DNA of 64,000 bases from Mytilus trossulus (Eukaryota), in NCBI RefSeq assembly GCF_036588685.1, contig NC_086377.1, positions 64,356,001 through 64,420,000 on the forward strand. Reading direction: 5' to 3'. Within the stretch, counting starts at the first letter, position 1; every line of letters begins with the position of its first letter. The position numbers and the translations under genes were made by a program. This document shows, one piece after another, positions 47,601-63,901 of this stretch. Below the pieces are notes generated by a model, which was given only the letters and a program-made list of their open reading frames with translations, did no database searches and was not told the origin of the DNA.

Positions 47601-49869
47601 AATTTTACGGACGCCATCACGAGTTGGTTGACCGTTATGGAATAACCATTTCACAAATGATATCGGATATGTTCCTTACGTCGTAACTACAATCCCCTTC
47701 CCTTTCATGAATTTGAACTACCGATTTAGACTATTTACCCGATTTGTAATCACATAAGCAACACGACGGGTGCCGCATGTGGAGCAGGATCTGCTTACCC
47801 TTCCGGAGCACCTGAGATCACCCCTAGTTTTTGGTGGGGTTCGTGTTGTTTATTCTTTAGTTTTCTATGTTGTGTCATGTGTACTATTGTTTTTCTGTTT
47901 GTCTTTTTCATTTTTAGCCATGGCGTTGTCAGTTTGTTTTAGATTTATGAGTTTGACTGTCCCTTTGGTATCTTTCGTCCCTCTTTTATAATCTTGCTTT
48001 ATCTTATCCATTCAATTAATACCTTCAAATATACCAAATAATCCGAGCATACACCTTATGATTATGATTTCATTGTAACCATTTGATAGGATAACATTAA
48101 TTGGAAAGAATAGGCTGACTTTACGACACTGGTTAACTTCTACTTCATTTGGTAACCAGTGGATAACTGTCGAATTAGCAGTTAAATAACATATCTAAAT
48201 CTTTGTTTTATAAAAGTATCCTTGCTTCTATTTCAGACTGGTTAAAAGCGCAAAAGAGCAAGAAAAATTATTGTCCGGTATTTACGATATGACGAGGACA
48301 GCCGAGGAAATAAAGAAGGTAACCTTGAATATCATTTATTTTACAATACTTTAAGTTTGTATATAGTTTAGTCATAAACACAATTGTGATGGTTTAATTT
48401 TTTTTCTAATTATTCTTAATCTTTTAATAAATAACTAAAAAGAATGGTGGTACAATTGCGAATAAGACAACTCTTCACAAGAAACCAAGTGACACAGATA
48501 TTATCAACAATACGTAACCAAAATAGTTATATTAAGTTACACATAAGACCTTCAAAAGAACCAAACACTTAACCAATACTTCAACATCATATAAAGCCTT
48601 TTGATAGGGAATACATTCTCAATGGAGAATCAACGAATACAAATGTTTAACGTCTGTTGTTTGAATTGGCATGCGTTCCGACTGCGACCCCTCGCACTCA
48701 CGGCAACACGCTACTATGTCTTGACGCGATATACATGACAAAGTTCGGTTTATTATTTATACATAAACACATATCGACTTTTTTAAAAGTAATGTTCAAT
48801 TAATCATAGATACCACCTTATTTATTGTATATTGTCTGGACATATCGATTTAATGAAAATTCATAAAAAGAATAACAAAAAAGGGTACTGTTTGAATAGA
48901 TTGTTTTTTAGTGATTTTATAGTGTTGTACGGGTTATACTGTTGCATAACTTTAAAATTTGTTCAATGCTATGTAATAACCTATTTTGCAAAATGGTAAG
49001 AACTCTATCATGGATACCAATAACCTCCTTTCAAGTTTAATCTACTAGTGTGTTTACCAACATAATTGTTTTAATGTGTGCCTGGCCTCATTAAAAAAGT
49101 AAAATCACAAAAAAAAAACTGAACTTCATGGAAAATTCAAAAAAGGAAATTCCCTTTTTAATACAAATAGCAAAATCGAAAGCTCAAACACATCAAACAA
49201 ATAGACAACAACTGTCATATTACTGACGTGGTACAGGCATTTTCTTATGTAGAAAATGGTGGATGAACCTGATTTTATAACCAGCAAAACCTCTCACCCG
49301 AATAACAGCCGCTTCAAATTATTATTGAAAATCGTCAGAAAACAATTATTGATTACATTCTATATAATTATGAGGGTCTTGATTCGGGGATGGGGTCCTT
49401 CATTTATGTTTTGTTTTTTACTAATTTAAAAAATACTAAACTTTTTATTATTAAATCATATTCTTTATATGTGAGTTCCTAATGACTCTACTCACTTTTC
49501 TCTCTTTCTTTCAAGTTTTGCCCATTTTTTTAATTCTATAATTCCTATCTTTACTCTGAATTAAAATTCGTAAACGATAAGAATATCAAATTTAGTGTTT
49601 TTGTTGTTCTGTTGAGATGTTTGTTTTCTGTTTTGACATTTTAGGCCTACAATAATTTTGTTCCATACCCATTGGATATATTTTATTCCGGTTACAGGGA
49701 TTGTTTTTTATTCACCTTTATTTTTCAGTTTGCGTACTTGATTAAAGATTCCCCGACGATGATGAAACTAAATCATAAGCCAGGGGTAGAACAATCGAAC
49801 AGCAGATACAAATGGAGCAAAAGGAATTATCATAATATCAAAAAGTGGTTGCTGGACCAAAACATTTGA
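11603..49869 (+). CDS. M1-family zinc metallo-aminopeptidase, aminopeptidase N-like, type II membrane anchor, ~955 aa, 21 coding exons
   Basis: Exons, all GT-AG and phase-consistent: 11603-11753 (signal anchor [23 protein letters not shown]), 15319-15754, 18284-18439 ([18 protein letters not shown]), 19797-19914 ([11 protein letters not shown]), 21147-21267, 22135-22289 (GAMENWG...HELAHM), 25901-26014 (WFGNLVT...WLNEGFA, completing HEXXH-X18-E), 26609-26740 (FDTITYSK, catalytic Tyr), 27904-27969, 29704-29769, 30446-30633, 32486-32586, 33258-33397, 34288-34343, 35345-35492, 40016-40092, 41342-41452, 44256-44423, 46058-46198, 48237-48318, 49729-49869 (stop TGA). Total 2868 nt. Orthology within the M1 family was not determined. 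Confidence 0.95.
11810..12040 (-). mobile_element. Degenerate tRNA-derived SINE (V-SINE-like)
   Basis: Minus strand starts ggtggcgagtggtctgagtagt (A-box-like), has gagttcgta (B-box-like), and later ...acactccggttcctccacc. Related fragments at ~19560-19635 and ~21730-21850. Confidence 0.5.
13482..13941. mobile_element. MITE-like element with internal tandem duplication
   Basis: Terminal ttatcttacc / ggtaagataa. Two internal copies of aagggacgta...actactaaccgtg(c/t)atgaaataagc(t/c)ccgcctc. Confidence 0.55.
15767..15949. mobile_element. Short fold-back MITE immediately after APN exon 2
   Basis: aattcgccgtttcagaatctaatgcatc... is inverted relative to ...gatgctttagattctgaagaggccaatt. Confidence 0.6.
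16130..16445 (-). mobile_element. tRNA-derived SINE with Deu/Nin-like central domain
   Basis: Minus strand has tggtgaagtggttagtgcgttggact (A box), ggttcgattccc (B box), then gtccgtcggaagggggcgacaaa...gcacgttaaagat...gaaaaagagcag, resembling the Deu/Nin domain. Confidence 0.65.
16697..16969. mobile_element. MITE flanked by TTAA (Kolobok/piggyBac-type target)
   Basis: ttaa|ggtggtacc ... ggtaccacc|ttaa. Confidence 0.75.
17041..17955 (-). mobile_element. ~915-bp non-autonomous TIR DNA element, copy 1
   Basis: Termini gggcgtatgacatttgcgccgat / atcggcgcaaatgcaaaacgccg, three subterminal catttgcgccgat repeats per end, 8-bp TSD attttaat on both sides. Confidence 0.9.
18478..19419 (+). mobile_element. 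~940-bp non-autonomous TIR DNA element, copy 2 (inverted relative to copy 1)
   Basis: Same termini and subterminal repeats, 8-bp TSD caataatc on both sides, and collinear with the reverse complement of 17041-17955. Confidence 0.9.
22251..24073 (+). repeat. 55-bp minisatellite, 33 copies plus a partial one; unit is the last 39 nt of APN exon 6 plus 16 nt of intron 6
   Basis: Unit atagttacaagtatagtatctcatgaactggcacatatg|gtaaggaaataaacgt. Copy 1 is the real coding sequence ([13 protein letters not shown]). Confidence 0.97.
24655..24818. repeat. 54-bp tandem repeat, 3 copies
   Basis: tctgacacaaaaccaagcattcctcatacgttttataacagaaaagaaatgata starts at 24655, 24709 and 24763. Confidence 0.85.
27228..27435. 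mobile_element. Tc1/mariner-type MITE
   Basis: ta|ctgtgaattcatt...ttggataccaattttcgtggat ... atccacgaaaattgatacccacgaaaataaatgaatccacag|ta. Confidence 0.75.
28376..28610 (-). mobile_element. Short Helentron/HINE-like element (same family as 34480-34780; partial copy at ~54711-54860)
   Basis: Reverse complement of 34480-34780: tttttatgccc ... ggtagtttttgatgaagttgaagtccaatcaacttgaaacttagt ... acattcttgtt. Confidence 0.65.
29298..29640 (+). mobile_element. Degenerate tRNA-derived SINE (Meta-like core) with (CCAT)n tail
   Basis: Degenerate tRNA-like head, core ccaaggactttataattgtcctttgctgcttcttc...catgcagcattaa, and tail ccatccatccatccatcc. Confidence 0.55.
30926..31643. mobile_element. Fold-back MITE with ~310-bp inverted arms
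   Basis: ttaa|ggtagcacaatacaaagatttt ... aaaatctttgttttgtgctacc|ttat. The arms align over ~310 bp, e.g. ataaatgaggtaccaaaa / ttttggtacctcatttat. Confidence 0.85.
34480..34780 (+). mobile_element. Short Helentron/HINE-like element
   Basis: aacaagaatgtgtcc head, (GACG/GGAC)n microsatellite, 3' hairpin atgcccctctac...gtaggtgggga. Confidence 0.7.
36128..38579 (+). mobile_element. Head-to-tail dimer of a ~1.15-kb Helentron-like non-autonomous element with a triplicated 3' hairpin
   Basis: Copy 1 spans ~36128-37270 and copy 2 ~37278-38426; both start ccaattgttcagagaacaattgaaggtcttt. Three exact 51-bp units follow (38427, 38478, 38529), each containing the hairpin taggtctttccac-agaaaa-gtggaaagaccta. 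Confidence 0.8.
38954..38998 (+). ncRNA. Type I hammerhead ribozyme, apparently intact, in a ~185-bp repeat (38856-39041)
   Basis: Stem I gcgtca/tgacgt, core CTGATGA, stem II gtct/agac with loop tttgc, GAAA, minimal stem III with palindromic cgcgcg, and a GTC cleavage triplet (cut after 38992). Confidence 0.8.
41894..41935 (+). ncRNA. Type I hammerhead ribozyme-like motif, second repeat family
   Basis: Stem I gcgttc/ggacgc, CTGATGA, weak stem II (aggtaaatcca), GAAA, palindromic aagcgctt stem III, and a TTC triplet (cut after 41929). Confidence 0.6.
41981..42385. repeat. 49-bp minisatellite, 8 copies plus a partial one, with diverged units continuing to ~42730 and at ~44098-44255
   Basis: Unit gccatacacatgactgttggtgttgtatacttgttccatattctattgt at 49-bp spacing (41981, 42030, 42079, ...). 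Confidence 0.9.
42737..44097. mobile_element. Non-autonomous TIR element inserted in the diverged minisatellite, with a duplicated right TIR
   Basis: Left end ggagtaggttcggtaaggacc. The right end occurs twice: ggtcttactcaaccttctcc and ggtcttactggaccttctcc. Host repeat sequence resumes after the element. Confidence 0.65.
43107..43908. mobile_element. Fold-back element with long inverted arms and TA TSD, nested in the element above
   Basis: ta|attgcgaacccaattgaaccttt ... aaaggttcaattgggttcgccat|ta. The arms match for >200 bp. Confidence 0.85.
44895..45307. repeat. Interspersed repeat with a ~160-bp hairpin at its left end
   Basis: agattcttacactgcaacaagtgtattacgatatttctccactc...aaattttattatttt is inverted against tttaaataataaaatttt...gagtggagaaaaatcgtagtacacgagttatagtgtcggaatct. 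Confidence 0.6.
46620..47987 (+). mobile_element. 5'-truncated, frameshifted Penelope-like retroelement (RT C-terminal half plus 3' UTR)
   Basis: RT motifs [31 protein letters not shown] and FRYIDDVL, followed by [16 protein letters not shown]...[11 protein letters not shown]. Frameshift in the A-run near 46905. The 3' UTR (47690-47987) recurs at ~59490-59810 and as fragments at ~1540-1745, ~10620-10720 and ~21390-21600 (minus). Assignment to Penelope-like elements is by motif resemblance. Confidence 0.85.
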
Positions 49870-51179: not shown

Positions 51180-52495
51180 CTACATAACGCGACACAATTT
51201 CCCTTTTTTGGTCAATTTTTTTTCCATCGCCTTCGACTTTTTTCTCAATTTCTCTAAGTACATACGATGATCATAGAATACTTTATCCATTTTTGAATGC
51301 AATTCATTTTCCTCTCTCTGTAGTTCTTGTTGGAGGGTCATATTTTGACGATTTCCTTGGTCTCTCATTTCTTTCGAAATTTCTTGGAGTCTTTCGTCTA
51401 TTGCTTTCATTTCCTCAACTGCTGTGTTCATTTGATCATAAAAATCAGTGTTTTTCAATGCTAACATTCGCTGATTGTGTTTTGATTTTGTTTCTTTTAC
51501 CAACTCTTGTAAATCTCCCTTCACTGTATCATACGCATCTTCTGCCTCTCTTTTCTCTCTTTCCTTCTCTTTTAGCAGGTTATTGGCTTTAAAAATTTCG
51601 TTATACAGATCTTCAATTTCTTCTGAATTAGGTCCAACTGTGTTTCCAGGAGTACTGCTTTCATCATCGCCTTTTGTTGACATTATGGAATACTTAATTC
51701 TTTTCTTCTGTTCTTCAAGCTTGATTTTTCGCTCTTCTTGTTGATGAAATTCTTCCTGTTTTTGTTTTTTTATTTCTCTATTTATGTCGACTTGTTTTCC
51801 GTACATGTTTTCAATTTGCTCAATTTCCTTTAGTTTTTCCATTTCTATTTGTATCCGTGATTGTCGAGCATTGTCTTTAGCATCTTTAAACAAATTATTT
51901 GAAAAGCACATGTTCTGATTTTGTTTGACGATAGTGTCGATTAAATCCAATAGATTTTTGATCATTTCCGCTCTATTTTCCGCTGCAGCTGTGTTGTCCA
52001 TAGCGAAATAACGTCCATGACATTTTTCTATGTACGTTGTTAATGGTGTACCTGATTCTTTTATATAATCTTCAATAGTATCATTTTGATTCTTCAATTC
52101 GTCCATTCTGGTAAATAAGATAATCGAAAAAGCTTCCATTTCCTGTCCAAATATGGCAAATAACTGGTCTAGGGATTCAATTTCTTCTGGAGTAAATCTT
52201 CCAATCTGCAACACAAGTAAAAATACATGTGGACCTGGAAATGACATATGAACACAACGAATGATACTTTCTTCAATTTCTATTGGAGATAGTTTGGTAT
52301 CAAACAATCCAGGAGTATCAACTACTATAATTTGGCGATCATCAATTTTGATATCACCGCGTTGACACTCTTTGGTAACAGACAGGCCTGCCATCTTCGA
52401 TTTGAAGTTTTTATGTCCAAGGATAGCATTCCCAGTGGCACTCTTACCCGATCCAGTTTTTCCAACCATTACGATTCTAAGTTGTTTGAAGGTGT
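51180..52495 (-). CDS. GIMAP/AIG1-family GTPase terminal exon with coiled coil and polybasic CaaX C-terminus
   Basis: G1 GKTGSGKS, G2 SVTKEC, G3 DTPG, conserved box GPHVFLLVLQIGRFTPEE, G4 TRMD, then a long E/K/Q-rich coiled coil ending ...KKLTKKGKLCRVM-stop. Acceptor ttctacttgtag| lies just before 52495. Confidence 0.95.
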
Positions 52496-55400
52496 CTACA
52501 AGTAGAAACTAGATGTTAATAACAAGGCACATTAGTCATGTTTACTTTTATAATACACATTGTTGCCGCATTTCCAGGCACCTGGCCCATATGCCAAGGG
52601 AACTTTTCTAAAAACTTGGCGTCCTGCGTCAATCGTCTGTTGTCCGGTTACATGGTTGTTTTTATGAGATGAAAAATATAATGTGAAGGAGGCGTCGACA
52701 TTATTTGGGTCAAAAAATCTGCAAGCTTAAGGAGGTTAGCTACTAGGTGTCAAAATAACAAGCTTTTTGATAGTGTATTAATAAAGGAGCCTAAAAGGCA
52801 AAAAGTAAAATATAGGTCAATGAGTTTGTTTTCTAGAAAGCAGCCATTGCAATTTTGGCGGAAAAATGTCCTCTCTTGCTTTTTCATAGCTTTATCATTG
52901 ACAAATGTAAGTTCTTAAAAACTATTGAAAAATAATTTTAATGTTAAGAATTATAATGGATAAAACCATAGAAAAAACGAAAATCTGACAAAAATCCCAG
53001 AACATGACAATAGAACATTCTTAAACATGTCATAAGCACAGACGGTAACCAGCAATAGACAAGTGTTTATATGTTATCTTTTTTGGGCCTATATTTATCA
53101 TCATGACCAAAGAAGTAGTGAATACATTTAATAGAGAATATATAACATTGTGATCAACATCTACTAATAATTCCCTAAAAATTTAAAAAAACAAAATTGT
53201 CATATCATGAGGTTTCAGATGCTGCAGTGTTCAATATATATTTATAACTTCATTAATAACACCTTAACTTTTGAAGTTCAAGTTTTAGAAAATAGTTTTA
53301 GTTCGTGTTATCATTAGTTTATATTGATATGAACCGATATGACATTAACATATTTAGCTTATTTAGATACGGTTTTTTTATTGAGTAAACTTGAGATTTA
53401 TAAAACCGGCTTCTAAATTATTTAGACATAGTACAATAAATGGAAGACAATTGAATTATAATCTGCAAATAAGTATTCTATCATGTATTGCTTGTTCGTT
53501 GTTTCAACTTCGAATGTGGCAATTTCATCGAATAAGAAAAAAGAATATCTGCATACAGCATAATTACTATGAAACATTTAATATATTCATTATTGATTTC
53601 ACAATGGTTGTTGCAGTATGAGGCTTATTACACTGACTACTAGTACTAGTACCATATACAAGAGTTTTTAAAAATTATTTTGTGAACGATGTTTACATGT
53701 CTTACATAATAATGATAGCAATATAAGTTTAAAATAACCTCAACTGTATGAACCCTATGTCAGGTCAACATTACATTGATCACATCTATAAACACAGTCA
53801 TGCCTTTTATATCACTCTCGTTTTATCATGTTTATCGCGCTGTAGTAATGTATATATATGTTGAACCCTAATCCAATAGTCACTAAAAAATGCTGTTTTC
53901 ACTGGTCACGACGATCAATGTTCTACACAGATTTGATTCATCTTCATTATTCCTAAATTTGACCATACAAAGTAAACCTCAACATAACTACTTATAACAA
54001 AAAGTATTGTCCCACCTATATCTTCGTAAATAGGTTCTTCGTAGGTAGTTTTCTGAGACAAATAGTTTGGAACATTCTCATAGTCTGAAATAAAATAATA
54101 ATTTAAAGTATTGTGCCTGAATTACTGCAGTACATGTATGACACATGATGACACAGTATAATGTTAAACAAGCAGATATTATGTTATGTCTAATGTATAT
54201 GTTAACCTCTTAACCATTCACGGTATCAACATTACAAACAGAAGTAAATTATAAGAAGCGATTGTAAATATTGGAATAAAGAACGTTTGTAACATAGTAA
54301 GGTACATGTAATTAAGAGTTAAAATAATATAATAAGTATTGCGTATGTTTAGTTAGATTTGTATTACGGCTATGTTCAGGGATGTACTTTAAAATATACT
54401 ATAATGTTACCGTTACTTATCCCTGGTCTATAATGTGGGTAATCATAATCGTCATAATCGTCATCTGAGTTGTCCCTTTGCTGTATTTCATACGTCCTTG
54501 TCAGCTCTGAAAAACAATATAATCATTTCGTAGATTTATGAAAGATTAAAGAGATAAAAGTATAAAAACATACTCAAAATAACAAGAGTCATCAACGAGT
54601 CTGTTTCACTCGCATAGGTGTATCTGCATTTTAACAATGAACACCCTCAATTATGGACCAAATCCATTTTTGTATGATCTTGTTCTTCTGACCGATATTG
54701 CTATTCGCATTTTTATGCCCCACATACGATACTGCTATAAGGTAAGGGAGGCATAAGGTTATGTTTGGTCTGTGCGTCCGTCTGTTCATCCGTGGGTTTG
54801 TCCGTCTGTCCTGCTTCAGGTTGAGGTTTTGGTCATGGTAGTTTTTGATGAATTTGAAATCCCATCAGTCAATGGCTTTTTTTTAGAATATTATTGCTAC
54901 AACTGTAAAATATAATAAGCTTCTATCTAACTATCTATCTAGTATCACGATTATAGTTTTTCAGATATAATGCAAAAACTCTTAAATGGAAAAAAAATGT
55001 GTTTTTACGTGTAATTACTTCAATAGCCGAAAAAAAAAAGCTGTTTAAACGAGTTTAGTTATATTTTCCAGTATTAAAGACAAGAGGCAAAATTTTGAAA
55101 CTTGTCATTTTAGTAAAATAAATACTATAAGTATTTTTTTGAAATTAAAAAACTTAAGTAAATCTTAAGAGTCTAAACATTATTTTCCCTACCAGATTTC
55201 TCTATAAGTTGATAAAAAAAAAATTGCATTTAACCCTTTTGTTAATTTTTAGCCATGTTTACACCTCGTTATTATTGCGATGTGTGTAAGCTTTGATTGA
55301 TTGTGGTGTTTTCACTACTTTTAATGTACATAGCTATAATATGAAAGGAATAGGAGAAAACCACAGCCCAACAAATATAACCTTGTTCAATAAAGATCGA

Positions 55401-58400
55401 ATTCGAACTCGTTTTGCAAAACCGCTTGCGTATATTTAGTGTTAAGTTGTTGTATACACATCTTATCGTAAACTTTTCATCGGTGCTACATATACCTCAA
55501 TAGACTTCTGGTGGATTTTGTATAATTTAATTAGCATTCTGTGCAACCTAGAATAACAAATCTATCTGGAAAATAAAAAAACCCTCTTTTTTACTGCAGG
55601 TGTCATGTTCCATCTACTAATGTTAAAATCTTATCGAGTACTGATATTTAATGTTGTTAAAGTATCATGAATACGACATACGATCTCTCTTTACCTGCAT
55701 TTGTTTGTTTCTATGTGGATAAAGTTTAAAGTTGAAACAAAATAATAACGTCATGCTCAAATGTTTGATGATATTTCACTTAATGAATTACTTTGTTTTT
55801 GTATTTTATATATAAGCTGTAATCATACCTTCTTCATAAATATGCTCGTGTAGAGATGTGTTCTCTGATTGTTTATCTTCGGAACTATCCGTTTCTTCAA
55901 AAGAATCATAATAATTATAACTTACGGCAAATGAAAGCCAATGGAAGCTATAACCATACTTGATAAAAACTACATTCATGACAAAACGCGTTACAAGCAT
56001 TTGACGACCACTCTCAACCCTCCTATCTGACTTAAAAAATCAAACGCATTTACTCGACGACAGGATAAAAAATGTAATGTCTAAAATGTTATTAACAAAC
56101 GAGGTCTTTTGATTGAAAGATTAATTTTATATCAGCACATTGGCTTGAAACATGAAGGATTGAACTTTTAATAAATTTCAAGAGGCAAGGTTTGTCGATA
56201 ATTTCAAAGACACCGTGATGCATATGATTTGGTTGCCCTTTATTGAATGTTTGATCTGGAAATGAATGTTTCACAATACACGATTTCTACACATTTTGAA
56301 AAATATTACCTTAGACGTATTAGGCAAAACTTTAAGAAATATTTTGTCTTCAATGCTCTTTAACTTCGTACTTCAATTGGCCTTTTCGACATTTTTTAAT
56401 TCGAGCGTTACTGATGAGTCATTATAGAAAAAACGTGCGTCTGAATAAGAATAAAATTCAATCCTGGTATCTTTGATGAGTTCATTTGTAATTACCAAAT
56501 GTGACTTATCTTATAAGTTAAATGTAATATGGCATTACAATCTCATGAGATATGTCCCTATTGCTACAGAAGCTTCTTTCTGTTTACTGTTATGAGTTCT
56601 GAAGTCCATAAGGTATATTATGTCGGTCTGTTACTGCAACTGAGATTACTTGCGGGTGTTTTTGTTTGCACTTTTCCGCTTCATGCATTGTTTCTTTCAC
56701 AAAATTGTTTGGTAGTAATCTGTGCTGACTTCTATGTTATTGTTTTTCTCTTTTCCATCAAATCATGGTATGAAAACAAACAACCAACGCTAGTTAAGAT
56801 GATAATCTATTGCAAATGACAGACTCGGGGATTGTATTCACTACCTCAGTGTTGACTGACAAGTTATCAATTGGAGTGCATTGCAGCATCAATGAGTTTT
56901 GATTGAGATGTTGACGTATTACTAAGATGAGCGTCTTGTTTAACAACAAAAAAAAAAGGAACTGAATGCGTTAGTGTTTTAGCTTTGTATATGCACACCG
57001 TATTTTTACACATCATTGGACATCGGTGATACATACATGTTTCAATCGTATTAAAGTATTAATTAAGGGCATACAATACAGTTTTGAACTCATAATAAAA
57101 TTGTGATGAGAATTTGCATATGGGCTATAAATCAAATATGTAATAAATATATATCTTTATGTGCCACTACTTTTAGTAAGATGAAGTCACTATTTCAGAC
57201 ATATTCTCAAAATTCGGATCATATGGAATGATAAAAATCTGTCGAAAAATTAAACTTTCCCGATATATCACAGTTTGACGTCGCAAAAAGTCTTTAGCTG
57301 GTTTGTAAACAGTGTATATAGATGATTTATAATGATTTTTTTTGAAATTACAGTTTTTTAGTGTGAACTATTTTTTTAGGAGTATATAGTTTACTTTGTT
57401 CGTTCCTTCGTGTTTAAGATTTAAAACACACAAGTAGTGATGTTGACGTTCTTCATTCCGAGTGATGTGATTTTTCTTATTCGTTCTTTTTCAGTGTCGT
57501 TTACACAATCAATATTTATACCTTTTTCAAATTCGTCATATATATCCTCGTCATCGTCGTCTGATGTATTTCCTGACTTATTTGCATGTGAACTACTCAG
57601 TTCTGATAAAAAAAAATACCATTTATATATAACGTTAGTAAGATGATACAAGATTTTACCACTTTACATAAACGCATGGAAGAAAAACCAACGACACGAT
57701 TTTAATTGCCTAAGGTATATTATAAACGCCTGTAGCTTTGCCTCGCTACAAGCTTCCTTCACACTTTTTAGAATTGTTGAAAAAGATAAGTTACAGATAC
57801 GAATTTCATCTTTCACATGTAGCAAAATGTATAATGAAATCAGTCTATTGATGTCTTTGCAATAATTTATATGTTTTGGTTGTCCATTATTGAATATCTG
57901 TTCCGTAGATGAACAAGGATATATTCCAGAGTCAATGTGTCCATGATCTTGTCATTACTGAAAACGACTTGCATATGAATATTGAATTACAATTATAATG
58001 AGTTCATGTAAAGGAAAGAACTATTACACTCATCTTACCTTTCAAAGAATATGTTTTACCCCCAACCCCTACTTTGGTTTCATTCTATCAAACTACGTAT
58101 ATAATTTTATGTTTTTGTAAGCGTACACAAGCAATCTTATTTTAAGAATTGTTTCAATCAATTAAGAACCACGAAATGATTGAAGTCGAATGCATAAAAC
58201 CACATCGGGGTTCAAACTTAAAACAGTAGTGTTGACTGGCTAGTTATCACTATGGATACTGTTTAGATCATTCATACACAGAGACCATTTGAGATGATTC
58301 ATATGTTGACATATTATAAAAAAAAAACGAAAATAGAATATGCAAATTGAAGAACTGAAACCAATTGATTAACTCAAAATAGATCATACTATTTCTAACA

Positions 58401-61400
58401 TACCTTTAGCTTTCGTATATTTTCTGTAGTTTCGTTGCGGAACTGGTGGTGTTAGATCACCTAAAACAAGATTATGAGGTTGAACGCATGAGAAAAACAA
58501 TACATATAAATTGATAAACACAATATGATATTGACATGCATTGAATGTGAGGAAAATGAGTGTTTAAAAGTGTGCATTTAACATACACTTGTCTTGTCTC
58601 TGCATATTTTACCAGAAGTTAAATGAAATGCGCAACATAAATATTTACCATTTTGTCTATTGAATAATTTTGGGTGGAAAGTATTGAATTTCTGTAGTAT
58701 ATTTAAAAGAGAGTGTTCTTCCTCGGTTGATTAAATTTCGAAAATAAAAAAATATACCTATTTTGAATATGTTTTGTGACAATTTTCATGCTTGTATTTT
58801 AAATTGCAAGAAACAAAATCTAAGGTTCGTGCAGTCATATTCTTTTAAATGGCTGAAAAATTTACGAATTTCAGATTTCCAAGAAAAACGCATATTTGAA
58901 TTCTTCTGAGTTAGCATACACATTTTTAAAAACGCTTTTGATATACACGGATGAATTGGTTTTTTTTCTCTAAAGGCGAACGGAACGGAACGTTTAAATA
59001 TGACTCATCAGTGGCTACAAACAAACCACGAAAAAACGTTATTATCAAAAAGATGAAGTACATTTACTATTACCATTTTTAAATAGAACAAATTTCCGTA
59101 TTTTGCATTGCGTTTTGTGAGAACTAGACATTACCGATAAAACCATTTGTTAATCTAGCGTTATTTCAGAAACATGTGCCAATGCACAATGATATATAAT
59201 CATAATACTGTCAGACATGTGTGATAGATGAAGAAGTCAGTTATTTATGTTTGAGTCGTAATATCCGAAGTTCTTGAACAATTCAAATAATTCAGAATAC
59301 GTTTTTTATAATAAAAAAAAAACACCAATAGAAGTGGAACTCAATTCTTCATAATAATGAACTAACTATGTATTGTTGATCGACCCAGTTTTGATATAAT
59401 ATAACAAGATTCTTGTTCGTAAAAAAATGTGAAGATTGTTTAAAATATAGATTAAAGATCAACCATCAAATCATCATTGTTACAATCACTGACAACTCGT
59501 TACGTTATATACAGTCCCCTTCCCTTTCATGAATTTGACCTCCCGAATAGGACTATTTACCGGATTTATTATCACATAAACAACACGACGGGCGCCACAT
59601 GTGAAGCAGGATCTACTTACCCTTCAGGAGCACCTGATATCGCTCCTAGGTTTTGGTGGAGTTCGTGTTGCATATTCTTTAGTTTTCTAAGTTGCGTCAT
59701 GTGTACTATTGTTTTTCTGTCTGTCTTTTTCATTTTTAGCCATGGCGTTGTCAGTTTATCTTCGATTTATGAGTTTTACTGTCTCTCTGGTATCTTTCGT
59801 CCCATTTTAAATGTCAGGTAGTTAAAGTGGTATTTGTTCAATATGAAATTCGTTCAAAATAACAATATATTCATATCTCATACGTTTGTCATAGATGTGA
59901 TCATCTATGAAGACTAAAGAATCCGAAAATAATTGAAGACGTTAGTGGAGGATCGTCATAGTCTTAATAGTTTTTAATATTATGTTATTTTCTTAAATAA
60001 AATCTGTCCTTGAACGTGTAAATATATAAAACTGTGTTCGGATGATTGATTATGAAAACAGGAGAATGCTATTAATAGCTGAATATCATTGTATATCTTT
60101 AGATACTTGCAATTTCTTTTCAACGGGAAAATATAATATTAAATTTGATCAATTTTATTTGCTATGAATTACGGCAACAAAAGTGGTTAAAATATAATAA
60201 CTCGATTCTGACCAAACTAATCAAGGTAAGACATATTAACTGAAGTAAAGACAATGAATTTAAATAGTTGTAGAATCGGATGCTTTTACAATATATGTTT
60301 CTTTTATTACAAGTCAATTTGTCACAACCTGGAGAATAATATAAATAACCTGAGTAAAACATAATTTGTAAAATCAATCATGTTTCTCGTGTCTCGTTTT
60401 TTTATAGAGATTATACCGTTGATTTTCCTGTTTGAATGGTTTTACATTTAGTAATTTGTGGGACCCTTTATAGCTTGTTGTTCAATGTGGTCCTATGATC
60501 CGTGTTGAAGAATGTACATTGACCTATCATGGTTTACTTTTATAAATTATGACTTGGATGGAGAGTTGTCTAATTAGCACCCATATCACATGTTTCTATA
60601 TCTATCTAAAGATAAGAATAAGACAATGTTATTCAATTATAAAAAATTATAAATCAACGTTTAAGAAGAGTTTAGATATGACATGTAGGATAAGATAGAT
60701 CATATGCATATACAGAAAATCTCTTTTATAGCTAACATTTATATATATATATATATATATATTTTAATAAGAGTTCATAAATTTCAAATTACCTTCGTTT
60801 GTTTTCTGTTCAATGTTAACGTCTTTACCATCAAATCTGGTTTGGGATGTTTCAATATGTGCTTGAGCTGCATTTTTATAAAACAAAATAAAGTAGCATG
60901 CGACATCATGGTAAAGCTTCAGAATGTATTAATTAAATCATTTTTATTAGCAGACTTGAGACTGTTGTGTTCAAATGGTCCATTCTTTAAATGCACGAAG
61001 ATCAAACTTAATTAATGTTCATATTTAGAAAAAAAAGAAATGTACTTTTAAAAAACTTACTCGCAGTATGACCACAAAGTGTTCATCTTACGTTGAATAT
61101 GATAGAATAGCTGATATAATGAGCAATGTGGGAGTACATATTATGTTGGATTGACAGGAATTTATATATTTCTTCAAGGCTTCAAACTCTTGCGTTATAA
61201 CGTTTATTCATATTTTTTGTTGGTTTACTTGGTAGAATCAAGTAACTCATGATTAAATACTTAAAAATAAACCAACAAAAACCAATATATTGTACCTTAT
61301 CTAAAAGTATAATTCAAAGACATGTTGTTGAAAAAAGTAAAATCACAAAAATATTGAACTCCGAGGAAAATTCAAAACGAAAGTCCCAAATAAAATGGCA

Positions 61401-63901
61401 AAAGGAAATAATAAAAAACACCAAACGAGTGGACAACAACTGTCATATTTCTGCGTGGTACTAGCATTTTCAAAAGTAGAAAATGGTGAAATGAACCTGG
61501 TTATATAGCGCTAAACCTCTCATTTGTACTAAAAAATACACTAGTGTTAGAGATTGTTTTAATAAAATTTTCTGAAATGTTTACAATTCGTTCAAGTTTT
61601 TAAATTGAAAATTGACGTGGATTCATAATCCTGTTTTTTAGGTCTCTTAGTTTACTCTAGTTTATTTCAAATTTATTGTCTGTCTGTTTGTTTTAATCTT
61701 CTAAACTCGAGATATGTAGTACTTGAAAAACTAGTGATCTTCTAACCTATTACATGTATTATGAGGCAAATAACTAGTGATTTGAGCAATTATGTTTAAA
61801 TATGTTAATGTTAATGTTTGTCAAATTTTTTCATTTGTTTATACCTGCAATACTTTCCTGATCTGTTTGCTCAACGTAGTAGTCTGGGATCCATCCTTCT
61901 GTATTACCATGTAAAACCCATATCCAATGCCCATCACTCGTTACATACTCATGTTCCACAACATCACCTTTCCTCACATTCAGGTTATCCGTGTCGTATT
62001 CGGATTTGCTTTTGAAGGATTGTTTAACCTTGTAAACTTTTCCTTTAATAAACATGTCCTAATTATAGTTTGCATTTTCATTTAATACTTTTAAGAATGT
62101 TCAATTGATTTCCATTTTGTTATTTATGTAAGTCTTCAACTATCAAAGCAAATTAAAAAAAAAATGGACCAGCAATATATTCAAAATGAGTGCATTTGAT
62201 AAATTGTACAACAATATTAGGTTTAATTAAGAAGAGTGCATGTCTACACGCACGGTTGAACTTTTTTAAAAGTTTAATAACAAAGATACCGAACGCCCAG
62301 TGAAATTCGGAGTCCCTTATAAAATCGCAAATTCAAAGGCTTACTCACATCTTACTTTGGGGCCTTCTAGAGCTGACTATGCGGTACGCGCTTTGCTAAT
62401 TTTTGAAGGCCGTAAAGTTAATAGCCATAGTTGTTAATTTCTGTGTCAATTGGAATAAAAAAAATGTGTTTGTCTCGAGTTTAGAAGATTAAAACAAATG
62501 ACATACAAAGAGTATGTCTTCATCACATGAACATCTTTTGTAGAGTTGTTTCATTGTCAATTATACCAAGCCTTCTTTTTATATCAAGAATATAAACGAA
62601 AATTAAAAAAACATACAAGACAAACACAGGTCTGATTTGGGACAGGCGCAAACATGCAGCGAGATATCAAACATCCCCTTTACCTTTAGCCAACGTAAAA
62701 TAAAGAAACATAAAGCAATACGCACATTAAAACTCAGCTTAAGAGAAGTCCGACAACGATGTCATAAAAGGGTAACAAAAGAAACTAACAATAATACATA
62801 AATGAACAAAGGACTACTGGCAGTTATTGGCATGCTAGCTCTACACCTTAATTAAACTGGTTGAAATATTATGTCTTCATCACATGAACATCTAGTATAA
62901 TCCCTCCCGTTATTGGTTTAGTATCAAATCATCATAAACTATATGAGAAGAACACAACTGGTATCAGGCCAAAAACTGGTTTTAAGAAATGTGTTTATTT
63001 CCGATGCCAAGATCCTACGAGTGAATCAATATTATTAAAATACGAAATATGAAAAATTACATGATAACTGCATAAATTTTAGATATCAACGTCCATAAAA
63101 TGAACTGATGAGTAATAAGTCATTTGAATCAACTACAAATAATATTGATGAAAAAGACAATATTTTGTTTGTGTGTCAGCAGGATTTGTATGTAACAATA
63201 TATCAAAAAGAACATATAATAAATTTTAAAACTTCAATACTAATATCAGTTGAGTCGTAAATCAATTTAGTTGTACAATACTTAAAATGTATACGTACCA
63301 TTCAATTACACATGAATTTGGGTAATGTACAAAGACAATGTGTTATTAATAAATGTACGACAACCTAAATGTACGACAACCGCGCAATGTGCAAAAAAAA
63401 TTGATTAGTATGTGCAGTTAAATAAAAAGCCGACAAATTGCTTTCATACCGTACATCTTTAATTTCTTTGGGGAAAAAAAAAAGTTAAAATCAAAACAGT
63501 TTTAATTTCATGGAACGTCTCGTAAATAGGTTGTAAACATCAGTAAACATCATTAAATCTCAGTACACGAAGTCTGAACTGAGTATAGTCGCAATTCATA
63601 AGTAAGAGTTTGTATACAATAAACTTAGAACAATTTTCGACAATAAATATGTCAATGATATTTTGTCTTTTGAAATTGTGATATTATTAACAATATTGTA
63701 TTACATTACTTTTCAGCGGAACAAAATCTGTTGGTTGAACAATTTTATCCTGGATCCATCCCTCAGTATCGCCATGTTCTACCCAGTGCCAACCTTCTCG
63801 GCTGTCTATAAGTTTGACAACATCTCCTTTTTTAACATTCAAATTATCTGTGTCGTAATCAGATTTACTTATAAAATCACACAAAACATTTAACAATGTT
63901 C
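51180..63901 (-). CDS. SH3-SH3-(Tyr/Pro-motif linker)-AIG1/GIMAP GTPase-coiled coil-CaaX protein; 5' end lies outside the window; >=~730 aa within the window
   Basis: Proposed exons: 63901-63705 (SH3 #1), 62058-61845 (SH3 #2), 60867-60793, 59913-59884, 58460-58404, 57602-57522, 55894-55829, 54506-54411, 54084-54016, 52495-51180 (AIG1 domain and tail). All are GT-AG and open in a common spliced frame; the linker exons are all phase 1-1. Joining them into one transcript is inferred from phase compatibility and from the GTPase exon having an acceptor upstream of its first Met. Confidence 0.78.
56310..56487 (+). repeat. Hammerhead-bearing repeat copy with a decayed ribozyme core
   Basis: Same family as 38856-39041. 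CTGATGA is present, but GAAA is mutated to AAAA and stems I and II are broken. Other decayed copies lie at ~50190-50297 and ~16450-16550 (minus). Confidence 0.7.
59490..59810 (+). mobile_element. 3' end fragment of the same retroelement family as 46620-47987
   Basis: Collinear with 47680-47987 (cccttccctttcatgaattt...acacgacggg...catttttagccatggcgttgtcagttt...ggtatctttcgtcc). Confidence 0.85.
61845..62058 (-). CDS. SH3 domain exon #2
   Basis: YKVKQSF...DNLNVRKGDVV...GHWIWV...EGWIPDYYVEQ matches the SH3 pattern (ALYDY-like strand, ELSFxKGD, WW, GxxPxxY). Flanked by tag| and |gtataa. Confidence 0.85.
63705..63901 (-). CDS. SH3 domain exon #1 (paralogous to SH3 #2)
   Basis: LNVLCDF...DNLNVKKGDVV...GWHWV...EGWIQDKIVQ. 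Acceptor atcttgcag| is phase 1. The donor is either after 63705 (phase 0, fits the next exon) or after 63710. Confidence 0.82.

What the first reader, a model, noticed from the sequence alone, without database searches (positions are those of the whole stretch)
51180..63901. GIMAP/AIG1 GTPase fused to a tandem-SH3, phosphotyrosine-adaptor N-terminus and a prenylation tail
Seen in sequence: upstream of the large GIMAP exon, nine GT-AG exons splice in frame to give SH3, SH3, linker, VFIDDHIYDK, RDLTPPVPQRNY, SDDDDEDIYDEFEK, HEHIYEE, TYEIQQRDNSDDDYDDYDYPHY, DYENVPNY...TYEEPIYEDI, then DTFKQLRIVMVGKTGSGKS. The seven short linker exons are mostly absent from, or unrecognisable in, the ORF track. 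Established knowledge: characterised GIMAPs are AIG1 domains with coiled coils and sometimes a TM anchor, whereas SH3 plus clustered acidic Tyr motifs is the layout of tyrosine-kinase scaffolds such as the Cas family. Inference: this is an immune GTPase wired directly into Src/SH2/SH3 signalling at a membrane, or one carrying an integrated decoy of host kinase substrates. I know of no described protein with this architecture, but I cannot search for one.
Basis: partly seen in the sequence, partly recalled or inferred. Interest (0 to 1): 0.9.

Follow-up and report, generated by a model that had tools for sequence, protein, structure and literature searches.

The report
Mussel GIMAP GTPase with SH3-phosphotyrosine adaptor arm
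A mussel immune-type GTPase gene really does carry, in one spliced transcript, SH3 domains, a disordered arm of conserved proline and tyrosine docking motifs and a lipid-anchor tail, a layout that is machine-annotated in five Mytilus species but that I found described in no paper.

Summary
The window is from Mytilus trossulus. On the minus strand lies one gene, already modelled in RefSeq (XP_063438057.1, 830 aa; XP_063438058.1, 768 aa) under a misleading name.

Twelve GT-AG coding exons reproduce the 830-aa protein exactly, and every internal exon is phase 1-1. The order is:
- a RanBP2-like zinc finger
- three SH3 domains
- a disordered linker of about 150 aa (8.5% Tyr, 26% Asp+Glu)
- an AIG1/GIMAP GTPase
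- long helices
- a polybasic CaaX tail (CRVM)

Spliced contigs from four public runs (three studies) join four linker exons to the AIG1 exon.

- Three 5' exons lie beyond the window.
- The SH3a/SH3b junction is 63710|62042.
- The VFIDDHIYDK exon is unsupported.

The layout is conserved in five Mytilus species, in at least two old paralog lineages. I did not find it outside the genus or in any paper. Neither the CaaX tail nor an upstream zinc finger is unique to this gene: other mussel GIMAP paralogs have them too.

The function is inferred. I read it as a membrane-tethered, GTP-gated scaffold for Src/SH2/SH3 signalling (about 0.4). An Atg8-binding (LIR) reading of the same motifs is the main rival. 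I rate it a new variant of a known kind, of moderate interest.

The parts
51180..52495 (-). Exon 12 (last coding exon, stop codon included): residues 393-830 of the 830-aa isoform. It encodes the AIG1 GTPase, long helices and the polybasic CaaX tail.
   Evidence: Single ORF. Exact match to P0234. RNA joint 54016|52495 in 4 runs.
51858..52481 (-). AIG1/GIMAP G domain. It has P-loop GKTGSGKS, DTPG, the conserved box with GRFT, and TRMD.
   Evidence: Pfam AIG1 at 2e-60 to 4e-62. Human GIMAP4 at 2.8e-49 and GIMAP7 at 2.1e-47 in the PDB.
51210..51899 (-). Two long predicted helices (residues 592-666 and 683-821), a likely coiled coil.
   Evidence: AF2 secondary structure, pLDDT up to 84 in this part.
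51183..51257 (-). Polybasic stretch (11 Lys/Arg in the last 25 residues) ending in the CaaX box CRVM.
   Evidence: Sequence. The tail is identical or near-identical in every full-length homologue.
54016..54084 (-). Exon 11, phase 1-1. It carries the DYENV motif and the invariant EEPIYEDI motif, which sits directly before the G domain.
   Evidence: RNA joints on both sides. Exact match to P0234. Invariant columns.
54411..54506 (-). Exon 10, phase 1-1. Acidic DYDDYDY cluster.
   Evidence: RNA joints on both sides..
55829..55894 (-). Exon 9, phase 1-1. HEHIYEE motif. A paralogue of exon 8.
   Evidence: RNA joints on both sides..
57522..57602 (-). Exon 8, phase 1-1. DEDIYDEF motif.
   Evidence: RNA joint 57522|55894, and the contigs continue upstream..
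58404..58460 (-). Exon 7, phase 1-1. PPVPQRNY, a class-II-type PxxPxR SH3 ligand motif.
   Evidence: Exact match to P0234. D, PP and R are invariant in the homologues. The unit is present in 1-3 copies in the paralogs.
59884..59913 (-). Unsupported: probably a truncated duplicate of the 3' end of exon 9, or at most a rare cassette.
   Evidence: AG/GT flanks and phase 1-1. Absent from RefSeq isoforms and all homologues. Aligns to the exon 9 end plus donor. The X1 contig length leaves no room for it.
60793..60867 (-). Exon 6, phase 1-1. Spacer beginning AQAHIETSQ.
   Evidence: Exact match to P0234. Conserved in most homologues.
61845..62042 (-). Exon 5, phase 1-1. SH3b, the most conserved SH3, with the GWIPDYYV signature.
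   Evidence: Pfam SH3_2. Weak PDB matches to Grb2, p47phox and PIX SH3 domains. Near-invariant columns.
63710..63901 (-). Exon 4, phase 1-1. SH3a. In this species the usual Pro of the 3-10 helix is replaced by Gln.
   Evidence: Pfam SH3_2 at 3e-8. Exact match to P0234.

Best explanation
This is one expressed Mytilus trossulus gene. It encodes a multidomain GIMAP in this order: RanBP2-like zinc finger, three SH3 domains (the first is skipped in isoform X2), a disordered linker of about 150 residues, an AIG1 GTPase, long coiled-coil helices, and a polybasic CaaX tail (CRVM). The linker is built from phase 1-1 mini-exons.

Shown here: the gene structure, the splicing of the linker exons to the GTPase exon, the domain identities, and the conservation of the layout across Mytilus.

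Inferred mechanism:
- Farnesylation plus the Lys-rich stretch holds the C-terminus on the cytosolic face of a membrane, in the manner of K-Ras4B or GBP1.
- The G domain and coiled coil give GTP-dependent dimers or oligomers, as in human GIMAP2 and GIMAP7.
- The flexible N-terminal arm acts as an adaptor.
- Its PxxPxR site and acidic tyrosines (DEDIYDEF, DYDY, DYxNV, EEPIYEDI) recruit a Src-family kinase and are phosphorylated by it. They then bind SH2 proteins of the Src, Grb2 and Csk/SHP2 kinds.
- Its own SH3 domains bring in further proline-rich partners, or fold back on the internal PxxPxR site.

The invariant tyrosine lies about ten residues before strand beta-1 of the G domain. Docking there could couple tyrosine-kinase signalling to the GTPase cycle.
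For: Gene and transcript:
- Twelve GT-AG exons reproduce XP_063438057.1 exactly.
- Spliced contigs in 4 runs from 3 studies join exons 8-9-10-11-12.
- The 1949-nt X1 contig continues 588 nt upstream of exon 8. Exons 3-7 sum to 585 nt. The last 3 nt (AAG) are shared by exons 1 and 2, which is where a graph contig would stop if both isoforms are present.

Domains:
- AIG1 at 4e-62, with human GIMAP4/7/5/2/1 as the best solved relatives.
- All three SH3 domains score above Pfam gathering scores.
- The linker has pLDDT of about 25 and no secondary structure. The C-terminus forms two long helices.

Conservation:
- The same layout occurs in 5 Mytilus species and in at least 2 paralog lineages that predate their split.
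- In the linker, Pro (0.74) and Tyr (0.63) are the best-conserved residue classes, against 0.42 for non-Tyr residues.
- EEPIYEDI, the Tyr of E-[DE]-I-Y and the PP..R core are invariant.
- The CaaX cysteine and the basic tail are conserved in all full-length homologues.

Readers: SH2 domains are present in this genome, with 44 exon matches.

From established knowledge, recalled rather than tested:
- pYEEI is the Src SH2 optimum, and EEIYGEF the Src substrate optimum.
- pYVNV is the Grb2 site of Shc.
- PPVPPR is the Sos class II SH3 ligand.
- CVIM plus a polylysine stretch anchors K-Ras4B.
- hGBP1 is a farnesylated immune GTPase (PMC2903825).
Against: - No phosphorylation, binding, lipidation, localisation or immune-induction data exist for this protein.
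- The motif matches are short, and acidic Tyr-rich sequence also fits other motif classes (LIR, YxxPhi).
- SH3a lacks the usual ligand-contacting Pro in this species. SH3b has Gln and Phe where the ALYDY motif usually has aromatic residues.
- The SH3-to-PxxPxR docking test gave no answer.
Their link to the GTPase exon rests on RefSeq models, orthologues and contig-length arithmetic.
- The zinc finger is below the Pfam threshold.
Confidence: 0.45

Rival explanations
1. The architecture is the same, but the acidic tyrosine motifs are not phosphotyrosine docking sites. They act as Atg8/LC3/GABARAP-interacting (LIR) motifs or as YxxPhi sorting signals. The protein would then be a membrane-anchored GIMAP that links cargo or pathogen vacuoles to autophagy or vesicle traffic.
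For: YEDI and YENV/YVNV fit the LIR core [W/F/Y]xx[L/I/V], with the acidic residues upstream that LIRs favour (sequence). The best one is invariant. From established knowledge, not tested here: mammalian GIMAP6 binds GABARAPL2, and GBP/IRG GTPases work with the Atg8 system. The linker is disordered, as LIR carriers usually are.
Against: Several conserved tyrosines (DIYDEF, HIYEE, DYDY) do not fit the LIR core. The co-occurrence of three SH3 domains with a conserved PxxPxR site points to kinase/adaptor wiring. The two readings are not exclusive, since Tyr phosphorylation can gate a LIR.
Confidence: 0.2
2. The N-terminal arm has no specific signalling role. It would be a recent, lineage-specific product of exon shuffling and duplication that mainly acts as a flexible acidic spacer or self-association (condensate) region for an otherwise ordinary prenylated GIMAP.
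For: The layout is restricted to Mytilus in all searches. Motif-exon copy number varies freely between paralogs, with 1-3 PxxPxR units. All exons are phase 1-1, which favours neutral gain and loss. The M. trossulus assembly lacks a whole paralog lineage.
Against: Tyr and Pro are conserved selectively while neighbouring residues drift. SH3b is nearly invariant across paralogs. The layout has been kept in at least two lineages since before the species split.
Confidence: 0.15
3. Integrated decoy: the arm mimics host kinase substrates or adaptors so that pathogen effectors acting on them trigger the GTPase.
For: Only analogy with plant NLR integrated decoys, plus the expansion of GIMAPs in molluscs: at least 96 AIG1 exons in this genome and accessory domains in snail AIGs (PMC7053062).
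Against: No known effector. No sign here of the diversifying pattern expected of a bait, since the key motifs are invariant. No precedent for this in GIMAPs.
Confidence: 0.05
4. Gene-model artefact: an SH3 adaptor gene and a separate GIMAP gene lie side by side and are only fused by prediction. The GTPase would be made from its own start, as in the 429-aa M. californianus model.
For: XP_052085226.1 (P0001) starts at the internal Met. Some contigs read from exon 12 into intron 11, and a Logan protein (P0241) starts in intron-derived sequence.
Against: Spliced contigs in 4 runs join the linker exons to exon 12. Exon 12 begins in phase 1, with no in-frame start before the P-loop. The internal Met lies inside strand beta-1 next to the P-loop, so a protein starting there would lack part of the G domain. 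The M. coruscus cluster-mate of P0001 is a full 831-aa protein.
Confidence: 0.03

Closest known systems
Vertebrate GIMAPs (human GIMAP4, 7, 5, 2, 1)
   Same: AIG1 G domain with G1-G4 motifs and the conserved box, followed by helical or coiled-coil segments. About 45% identity to GIMAP4 over the G domain, E 2.8e-49.
   Different: Vertebrate GIMAPs are soluble or anchored by a C-terminal transmembrane helix. They have no SH3 domain, zinc finger, Tyr/Pro motif arm or CaaX box. The GIMAP review PMC8201404 contains none of the words SH3, prenyl, CaaX or tyrosine.
Mollusc AIG/GIMAP genes with accessory domains (Biomphalaria glabrata, PMC7053062)
   Same: A lineage-specific expansion in tandem arrays, with AIG1 plus coiled coil joined to extra N-terminal signalling domains and alternative splicing of those domains.
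   Different: The accessory domains reported there are death domains, a protein kinase, an ARM fold, Hint and transmembrane helices. SH3 and zinc finger are not mentioned in that paper.
Cas-family and related tyrosine-kinase scaffolds (p130Cas, Sin/Efs); lipid- or membrane-anchored adaptors LAT and PAG/Cbp
   Same: SH3 domain(s) plus a disordered region with clustered acidic tyrosines and a proline SH3-docking site for Src-family kinases. Membrane tethering of a multi-tyrosine adaptor.
   Different: No YxxP repeats, no Cas C-terminal domain and no sequence homology beyond SH3. The anchor is a C-terminal prenyl group rather than a transmembrane helix or palmitate. A GTPase is built in.
CIN85/CD2AP and p47phox
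   Same: Three SH3 domains, a proline-rich region and a C-terminal coiled coil (CIN85/CD2AP). Closely spaced tandem SH3 domains that can be auto-inhibited (p47phox). p47phox and Grb2 are the best, though weak, solved matches of these SH3 domains.
   Different: Per-domain E-values are marginal, so this is SH3-superfamily similarity rather than orthology. None of these proteins contains a GTPase or a CaaX box.
Prenylated GTPases: GBP1/2/5 and K-Ras4B
   Same: A C-terminal CaaX box. K-Ras4B also has a polybasic stretch. hGBP1 is a farnesylated immune GTPase that assembles on membranes (PMC2903825).
   Different: Different GTPase families (dynamin-like and Ras, versus the AIG1/septin-like class), and no adaptor arm.

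Membership tests
AIG1/GIMAP GTPase | AIG1 domain above the Pfam gathering score | tested here: met
   PF04548 at 204-210 bits against a cut-off of 27.
AIG1/GIMAP GTPase | G1 P-loop, G3 DxxG, G4 (T/N)(K/R)xD and the GIMAP conserved box | tested here: met
   GKTGSGKS, DTPG, TRMD and LLVLQIGRFT..EE were read in the exon 12 translation. They are invariant in 10 homologues and aligned to GIMAP4.
AIG1/GIMAP GTPase | Coiled-coil or helical extension after the G domain (the GIMAP definition of Lu et al. 2020) | tested here: met
   AF2 helices at 592-666 and 683-821. Definition from PMC7053062.
AIG1/GIMAP GTPase | GTP binding, hydrolysis and nucleotide-dependent dimerisation | not testable with these tools
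   Needs biochemistry. The Arg of the GRFT box is invariant. I recall that this Arg is the arginine finger of human GIMAP7, but I did not check that here.
SH3 domain (eukaryotic peptide-binding type) | Pfam SH3 model above the gathering score for each domain | tested here: met
   SH3_0: SH3_1 at 27.7 bits and SH3_2 at 25.1. SH3a: SH3_2 at 33.6. SH3b: SH3_2 at 25.4. Cut-offs are 21.8-22.9.
SH3 domain (eukaryotic peptide-binding type) | Ligand-contacting residues: ALYDY aromatics, the first Trp of WW, and the Pro and Tyr of the 3-10 helix | tested here: inconclusive
   SH3b keeps the Trp, Pro and Tyr (GWIPDYYV), but only one ALYDY-position aromatic (Phe), with Gln at the other. SH3a has Gln for the Pro in this species, whereas M. 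coruscus has Pro. SH3_0 keeps WW and Pro and has His for the Tyr.
CaaX-prenylated protein | Cys at position -4 with an aliphatic a2, where X decides farnesyl (M, S, Q, A) or geranylgeranyl (L, F) | tested here: met
   CRVM, conserved as CRVM or CLVM in the full-length homologues and as CHVL in one paralog.
CaaX-prenylated protein | Actual lipid modification and membrane association | not testable with these tools
   Needs an FTase assay or a C827S localisation experiment.
RanBP2-type (NZF-like) zinc finger | The W-x-C-x2-C-x3-N-x6-C-x2-C pattern and a match to the Pfam model | tested here: inconclusive
   The pattern is present in exon 1. There is no Pfam hit for this species, and 18.6 bits against a cut-off of 27 for M. 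coruscus. Nup153 zinc fingers are the best PDB match, at E 0.0036. The T-F pair of ubiquitin-binding NZFs is replaced by Y-C.
Cas family scaffold | Substrate domain of many YxxP motifs and the Cas C-terminal homology domain | tested here: not met
   No YxxP repeats appear in the linker (tyrosine contexts). Pfam finds no Cas-family domain. This is an analogy only.

The most novel reading that the evidence does not exclude
In mussels, a GIMAP GTPase is wired directly into tyrosine-kinase signalling. On this reading it is a farnesyl-anchored, GTP-gated scaffold. Its exon-modular arm is phosphorylated by Src-family kinases and read by SH2 and SH3 adaptors, and the phosphosite next to strand beta-1 feeds back on GTPase assembly. 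That would give the poorly understood GIMAP family its first explicit upstream input and downstream output.
Probability: 0.3. Interest if true: 0.75.

Novelty: new variant of a known kind. Interest (0 to 1): 0.5.

Why it matters
GIMAPs are abundant immune-associated GTPases whose inputs, effectors and biochemical logic are still unclear, even in mammals. A natural fusion that places an AIG1 GTPase in one polypeptide with SH3 domains, SH3 and SH2 docking motifs and a Ras-like lipid anchor is a guilt-by-fusion clue. It suggests where, and with what, at least some GIMAPs work: at a membrane, next to tyrosine-kinase or Atg8 machinery.

The clue is directly testable with a few recombinant fragments.

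The gene is also a clean example of one short linear motif per symmetric exon. That is a ready substrate for exon duplication, loss and skipping, and so for rewiring a signalling scaffold in a rapidly expanding invertebrate immune gene family.

Tried and rejected
Attempts that gave nothing usable:
- Complex prediction of SH3a+SH3b against the PxxPxR segment returned 'no answer' (score 0.00). It counts neither for nor against binding.
- The full-length AF2 model on a 10-sequence alignment had mean pLDDT 50.6. I used it only for disorder and helix boundaries and ran no fold search on it.
I therefore could not compare introns with M. galloprovincialis or M. coruscus to test conservation of the VFIDD candidate exon.
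- An ESM Atlas search with the N-terminal arm gave no usable hit.

Searches for the layout elsewhere:
- Word-based protein searches with the N-terminal regions found only Mytilus proteins.
- HMMER over 1.84 billion representatives with SH3b found only the Mytilus cluster. Below it came generic multi-SH3 proteins, none of the ten checked having AIG1.
- The alternative non-GTPase C-terminus of the M. edulis model P0122 has no counterpart in this locus.

Readings rejected:
- Cas-family membership, because there are no YxxP repeats and no Cas C-terminal domain.
- A bacterial-type SH3 origin. The marginal SH3_3 and SH3_4 scores are below cut-off, and the best solved matches are eukaryotic.

Procedure: I built and submitted no joined exon model. 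Exons were searched by reference, and whole-protein steps used public proteins returned by the searches.


Full report
**Identity of the locus.** The window is G000:C5:64356001-64420000 of a 1.3-Gb assembly. The best protein matches are all from Mytilus. One of them, P0125, sits on a contig of exactly the length of C5 (88,129,055 bp). It is XP_063438058.1 of Mytilus trossulus, and its cluster-mate P0234 is XP_063438057.1. RefSeq has therefore already modelled the gene, as isoforms X1 (830 aa) and X2 (768 aa). The name it carries is uninformative: 'putative leucine-rich repeat-containing protein DDB_G0290503'.

**Gene structure.** I checked the exons one by one against P0234. I built no joined model of my own and sent none to any tool. 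Whole-protein steps used the public proteins returned by the searches. Twelve coding exons, all with AG/GT flanks, translate exactly to P0234. Coordinates are on the window scale, minus strand:

| Exon | Coordinates | Content |
|---|---|---|
| E1 | 69353..69260 | zinc finger |
| E2 | 69020..68835 | SH3_0, skipped in isoform X2 |
| E3 | 68043..67981 | spacer |
| E4 | 63901..63710 | SH3a |
| E5 | 62042..61845 | SH3b |
| E6 | 60867..60793 | spacer |
| E7 | 58460..58404 | PxxPxR motif |
| E8 | 57602..57522 | DEDIYDEF motif |
| E9 | 55894..55829 | HEHIYEE motif |
| E10 | 54506..54411 | DYDDYDY cluster |
| E11 | 54084..54016 | DYENV and EEPIYEDI motifs |
| E12 | 52495..51180 | AIG1, helices, CaaX tail, stop |

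E1-E3 lie beyond the window end (L004). E1 ends in phase 1, E12 begins in phase 1, and every exon between them is phase 1-1. Any subset can therefore be skipped, duplicated or lost without breaking the frame.

- The SH3a/SH3b junction is 63710|62042, not 62058.
- E10 ends at 54411.
- The VFIDDHIYDK exon (59913..59884) is not in either RefSeq isoform, nor in any of 17 homologues.

The 3' end and donor site of that candidate exon align with those of E9. It is best read as a truncated duplicate of the HIY-motif exon, or at most a rare cassette.

- All the records laid were Logan contigs. The runs are guessed to be RNA or are of unrecorded type.
- Spliced contigs show the joints 57522|55894, 55829|54506, 54411|54084 and 54016|52495. 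The last two appear in all four runs and the first two in three. Each has CT..AC ends on the plus strand, which is GT..AG on the minus strand.
- The skipped introns have zero depth apart from repeat pile-ups.

This directly shows that the tyrosine-motif exons and the GTPase exon share a transcript. The X1 contig (1949 nt) extends 588 nt upstream of the true start of E8. E3 to E7 sum to 585 nt. The remaining 3 nt equal the suffix AAG shared by E1 and E2. That is where a de Bruijn contig must stop if both isoforms are present. The fit leaves no room for the 30-nt VFIDD exon. This is an inference, not an observation.

Some contigs also run from E12 into intron 11 and then diverge. A Logan-derived protein, P0241, begins in intron-derived sequence. 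Whether these reflect unspliced RNA, DNA or an intronic start remains open. The 429-aa M. californianus model starts at the Met inside strand beta-1, next to the P-loop. It is probably a truncated annotation, because its M. coruscus cluster-mate has 831 aa.

**Domains.**
- **AIG1.** Pfam gives 4e-62. The best solved relatives are human GIMAP4 (2.8e-49), GIMAP7, GIMAP5, GIMAP2 and GIMAP1. The P-loop, DTPG, TRMD and the conserved box are invariant in 10 homologues.
- **SH3.** Three domains score above Pfam gathering scores. Their best solved matches are weak and lie in p47phox, Grb2 and PIX. SH3b is nearly invariant. SH3a has lost the 3-10-helix Pro in this species.
- **Zinc finger.** E1 fits the RanBP2-type cysteine pattern but scores below Pfam thresholds.
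- **Predicted structure.** The AF2 model is poor overall (mean pLDDT 50.6). Even so, it shows beta-rich SH3a/b, a structureless stretch at 240-398 and two long C-terminal helices.
- **Tail.** The last 25 residues hold 11 Lys/Arg and end in CRVM.

**The linker.** It has 153 residues, with 13 Tyr (8.5%), 40 Asp+Glu (26%) and 7 Pro. Across six non-redundant homologues, Pro (0.74) and Tyr (0.63) are the best-conserved residue classes. The figure for non-Tyr residues is 0.42, and for Thr 0.25. The following are invariant in all ten aligned homologues:
- the D..PP...R core of the PxxPxR unit
- the Tyr of E-[DE]-I-Y
- the N-V of D-Y-x-N-V
- E-E-x-I-Y-E-D-I-D, directly before strand beta-1

The Tyr of D-Y-x-N-V is nearly invariant: one M. 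coruscus paralog (P0002) has Phe there. The PxxPxR unit occurs 1-3 times in the paralogs. E8 and E9 are duplicates of each other.

By recalled textbook knowledge, not tested here, these motifs resemble known ligands:
- the Sos-type class II SH3 ligand
- the Src optimal substrate (EEIYGEF)
- the Grb2 SH2 site of Shc (YVNV, which is the literal sequence in the M. galloprovincialis and M. coruscus orthologues)
- Src SH2 ligands (YEEI, and YAEI of FAK)

SH2 domains are plentiful in this genome. The same acidic Y-x-x-[ILV] motifs also fit the LIR core, which is the main rival reading.

**Distribution and origin.**
- In this genome, this SH3 type occurs only in this gene.
- AIG1 exons number at least 96. 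The nearest is only about 50% identical.
- Full-layout proteins exist in M. galloprovincialis, M. californianus and M. coruscus. M. edulis has partial models only.
- A tree of the G domain plus C-terminus puts them all in one clade (96/98 support) on a long stem. Group A holds the window gene and its orthologues. Group B has two subgroups, each containing M. californianus and M. coruscus, so the duplications predate the species splits.
- The M. trossulus assembly has no group B gene.
- Outside Mytilus nothing comparable turned up. This holds for the word-based searches, HMMER over 1.84 billion representatives and the Atlas.
- The Atlas places the whole protein nearest a mollusc AIG1 cluster in which 14% of members carry a RanBP zinc finger.
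- Two other GIMAP paralogs here have a RanBP-type finger exon just upstream of their AIG1 exon, on the same strand.
- Five of the ten nearest paralog ORFs end in CaaX.

The likely history is an older ZnF-AIG1-coiled-coil-CaaX gene into which SH3 and motif exons, all phase 1-1, were inserted in the Mytilus lineage. This is inference.

**Literature.** Eight full-text searches found no description of an SH3-AIG1 or a prenylated GIMAP protein. The terms combined GIMAP or AIG1 with SH3, Mytilus, bivalve, mollusc, oyster domain architecture, phosphotyrosine, and farnesyl/CaaX. I also read four candidate papers. The snail AIG survey lists death, kinase, ARM, Hint and transmembrane partners only (PMC7053062). 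The GIMAP review mentions neither SH3 nor prenylation (PMC8201404).

**Verdict.**
- The architecture is real, expressed, conserved within a genus and machine-annotated, but unstudied.
- The mechanism is a reasoned inference at about 0.4-0.45: a prenyl-anchored, GTP-gated scaffold for Src/SH2/SH3 signalling.
- A LIR/trafficking reading stands at about 0.2, and a largely neutral spacer reading at about 0.15.
- I class it as a new variant of a known kind, namely mollusc GIMAPs with accessory signalling domains, and rate its interest as moderate.

Noticed in passing
window 62900-63035: A dispersed repeat with more than 40 copies at 80-87% identity across the genome. It lies in the intron between the SH3a and SH3b exons.
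   Followed up: no
window 52697-53096, 54697-54896, 56297-56496, 57097-57296: Contigs from the runs pile up at high depth inside introns, up to about 3000 at 54697-54896. Many have loose ends. They look like transcribed repeats rather than exons of this gene.
   Followed up: no
window 52497-52533: Contigs in runs X3 and X23 continue from exon 12 into intron 11 and then diverge from the assembly. The Logan protein P0241 also starts in intron-derived sequence. The source could be unspliced RNA, DNA, an allele with a different intron, or an intronic start.
   Followed up: partly
window 47018-47686 (+): A 222-aa ORF with a reverse-transcriptase-like YIDD motif, probably a retroelement fragment just downstream of the gene.
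   Followed up: no
window 6588-7094 (-): An ORF with a long collagen-like Gly-X-Y run.
   Followed up: no
G000:C10:56844826-56846596 (-) and G000:C9:45741262-45744869 (+): Two other GIMAP paralogs have a RanBP2-type zinc-finger exon 1-3 kb upstream of their AIG1 exon, on the same strand. ZnF-AIG1 may be the older frame of this subfamily.
   Followed up: partly
L006, L007, L008, L015, L016 (nearest AIG1 paralogs in the same genome): Five of the ten nearest GIMAP paralog ORFs end in CaaX boxes (CLIS, CLIM twice, CRQS, CSII). Prenyl anchoring seems to be a common solution in mussel GIMAPs, unlike the transmembrane anchors of mammals.
   Followed up: partly
whole genome G000: The M. trossulus assembly holds only one SH3-GIMAP gene (group A). 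M. galloprovincialis, M. californianus and M. coruscus also have group B paralogs. This is either a loss, presence/absence variation, or an assembly gap.
   Followed up: partly
P0126 (M. coruscus, 965 aa) and P0122 (M. edulis, 526 aa): One M. coruscus model inserts a DZIP3-like HEPN domain between SH3_0 and SH3b. One M. edulis model joins the same N-terminal arm, at the exon 11 boundary, to a different non-GTPase C-terminus that is absent from this locus. Either could be real module swapping or a prediction artefact.
   Followed up: partly
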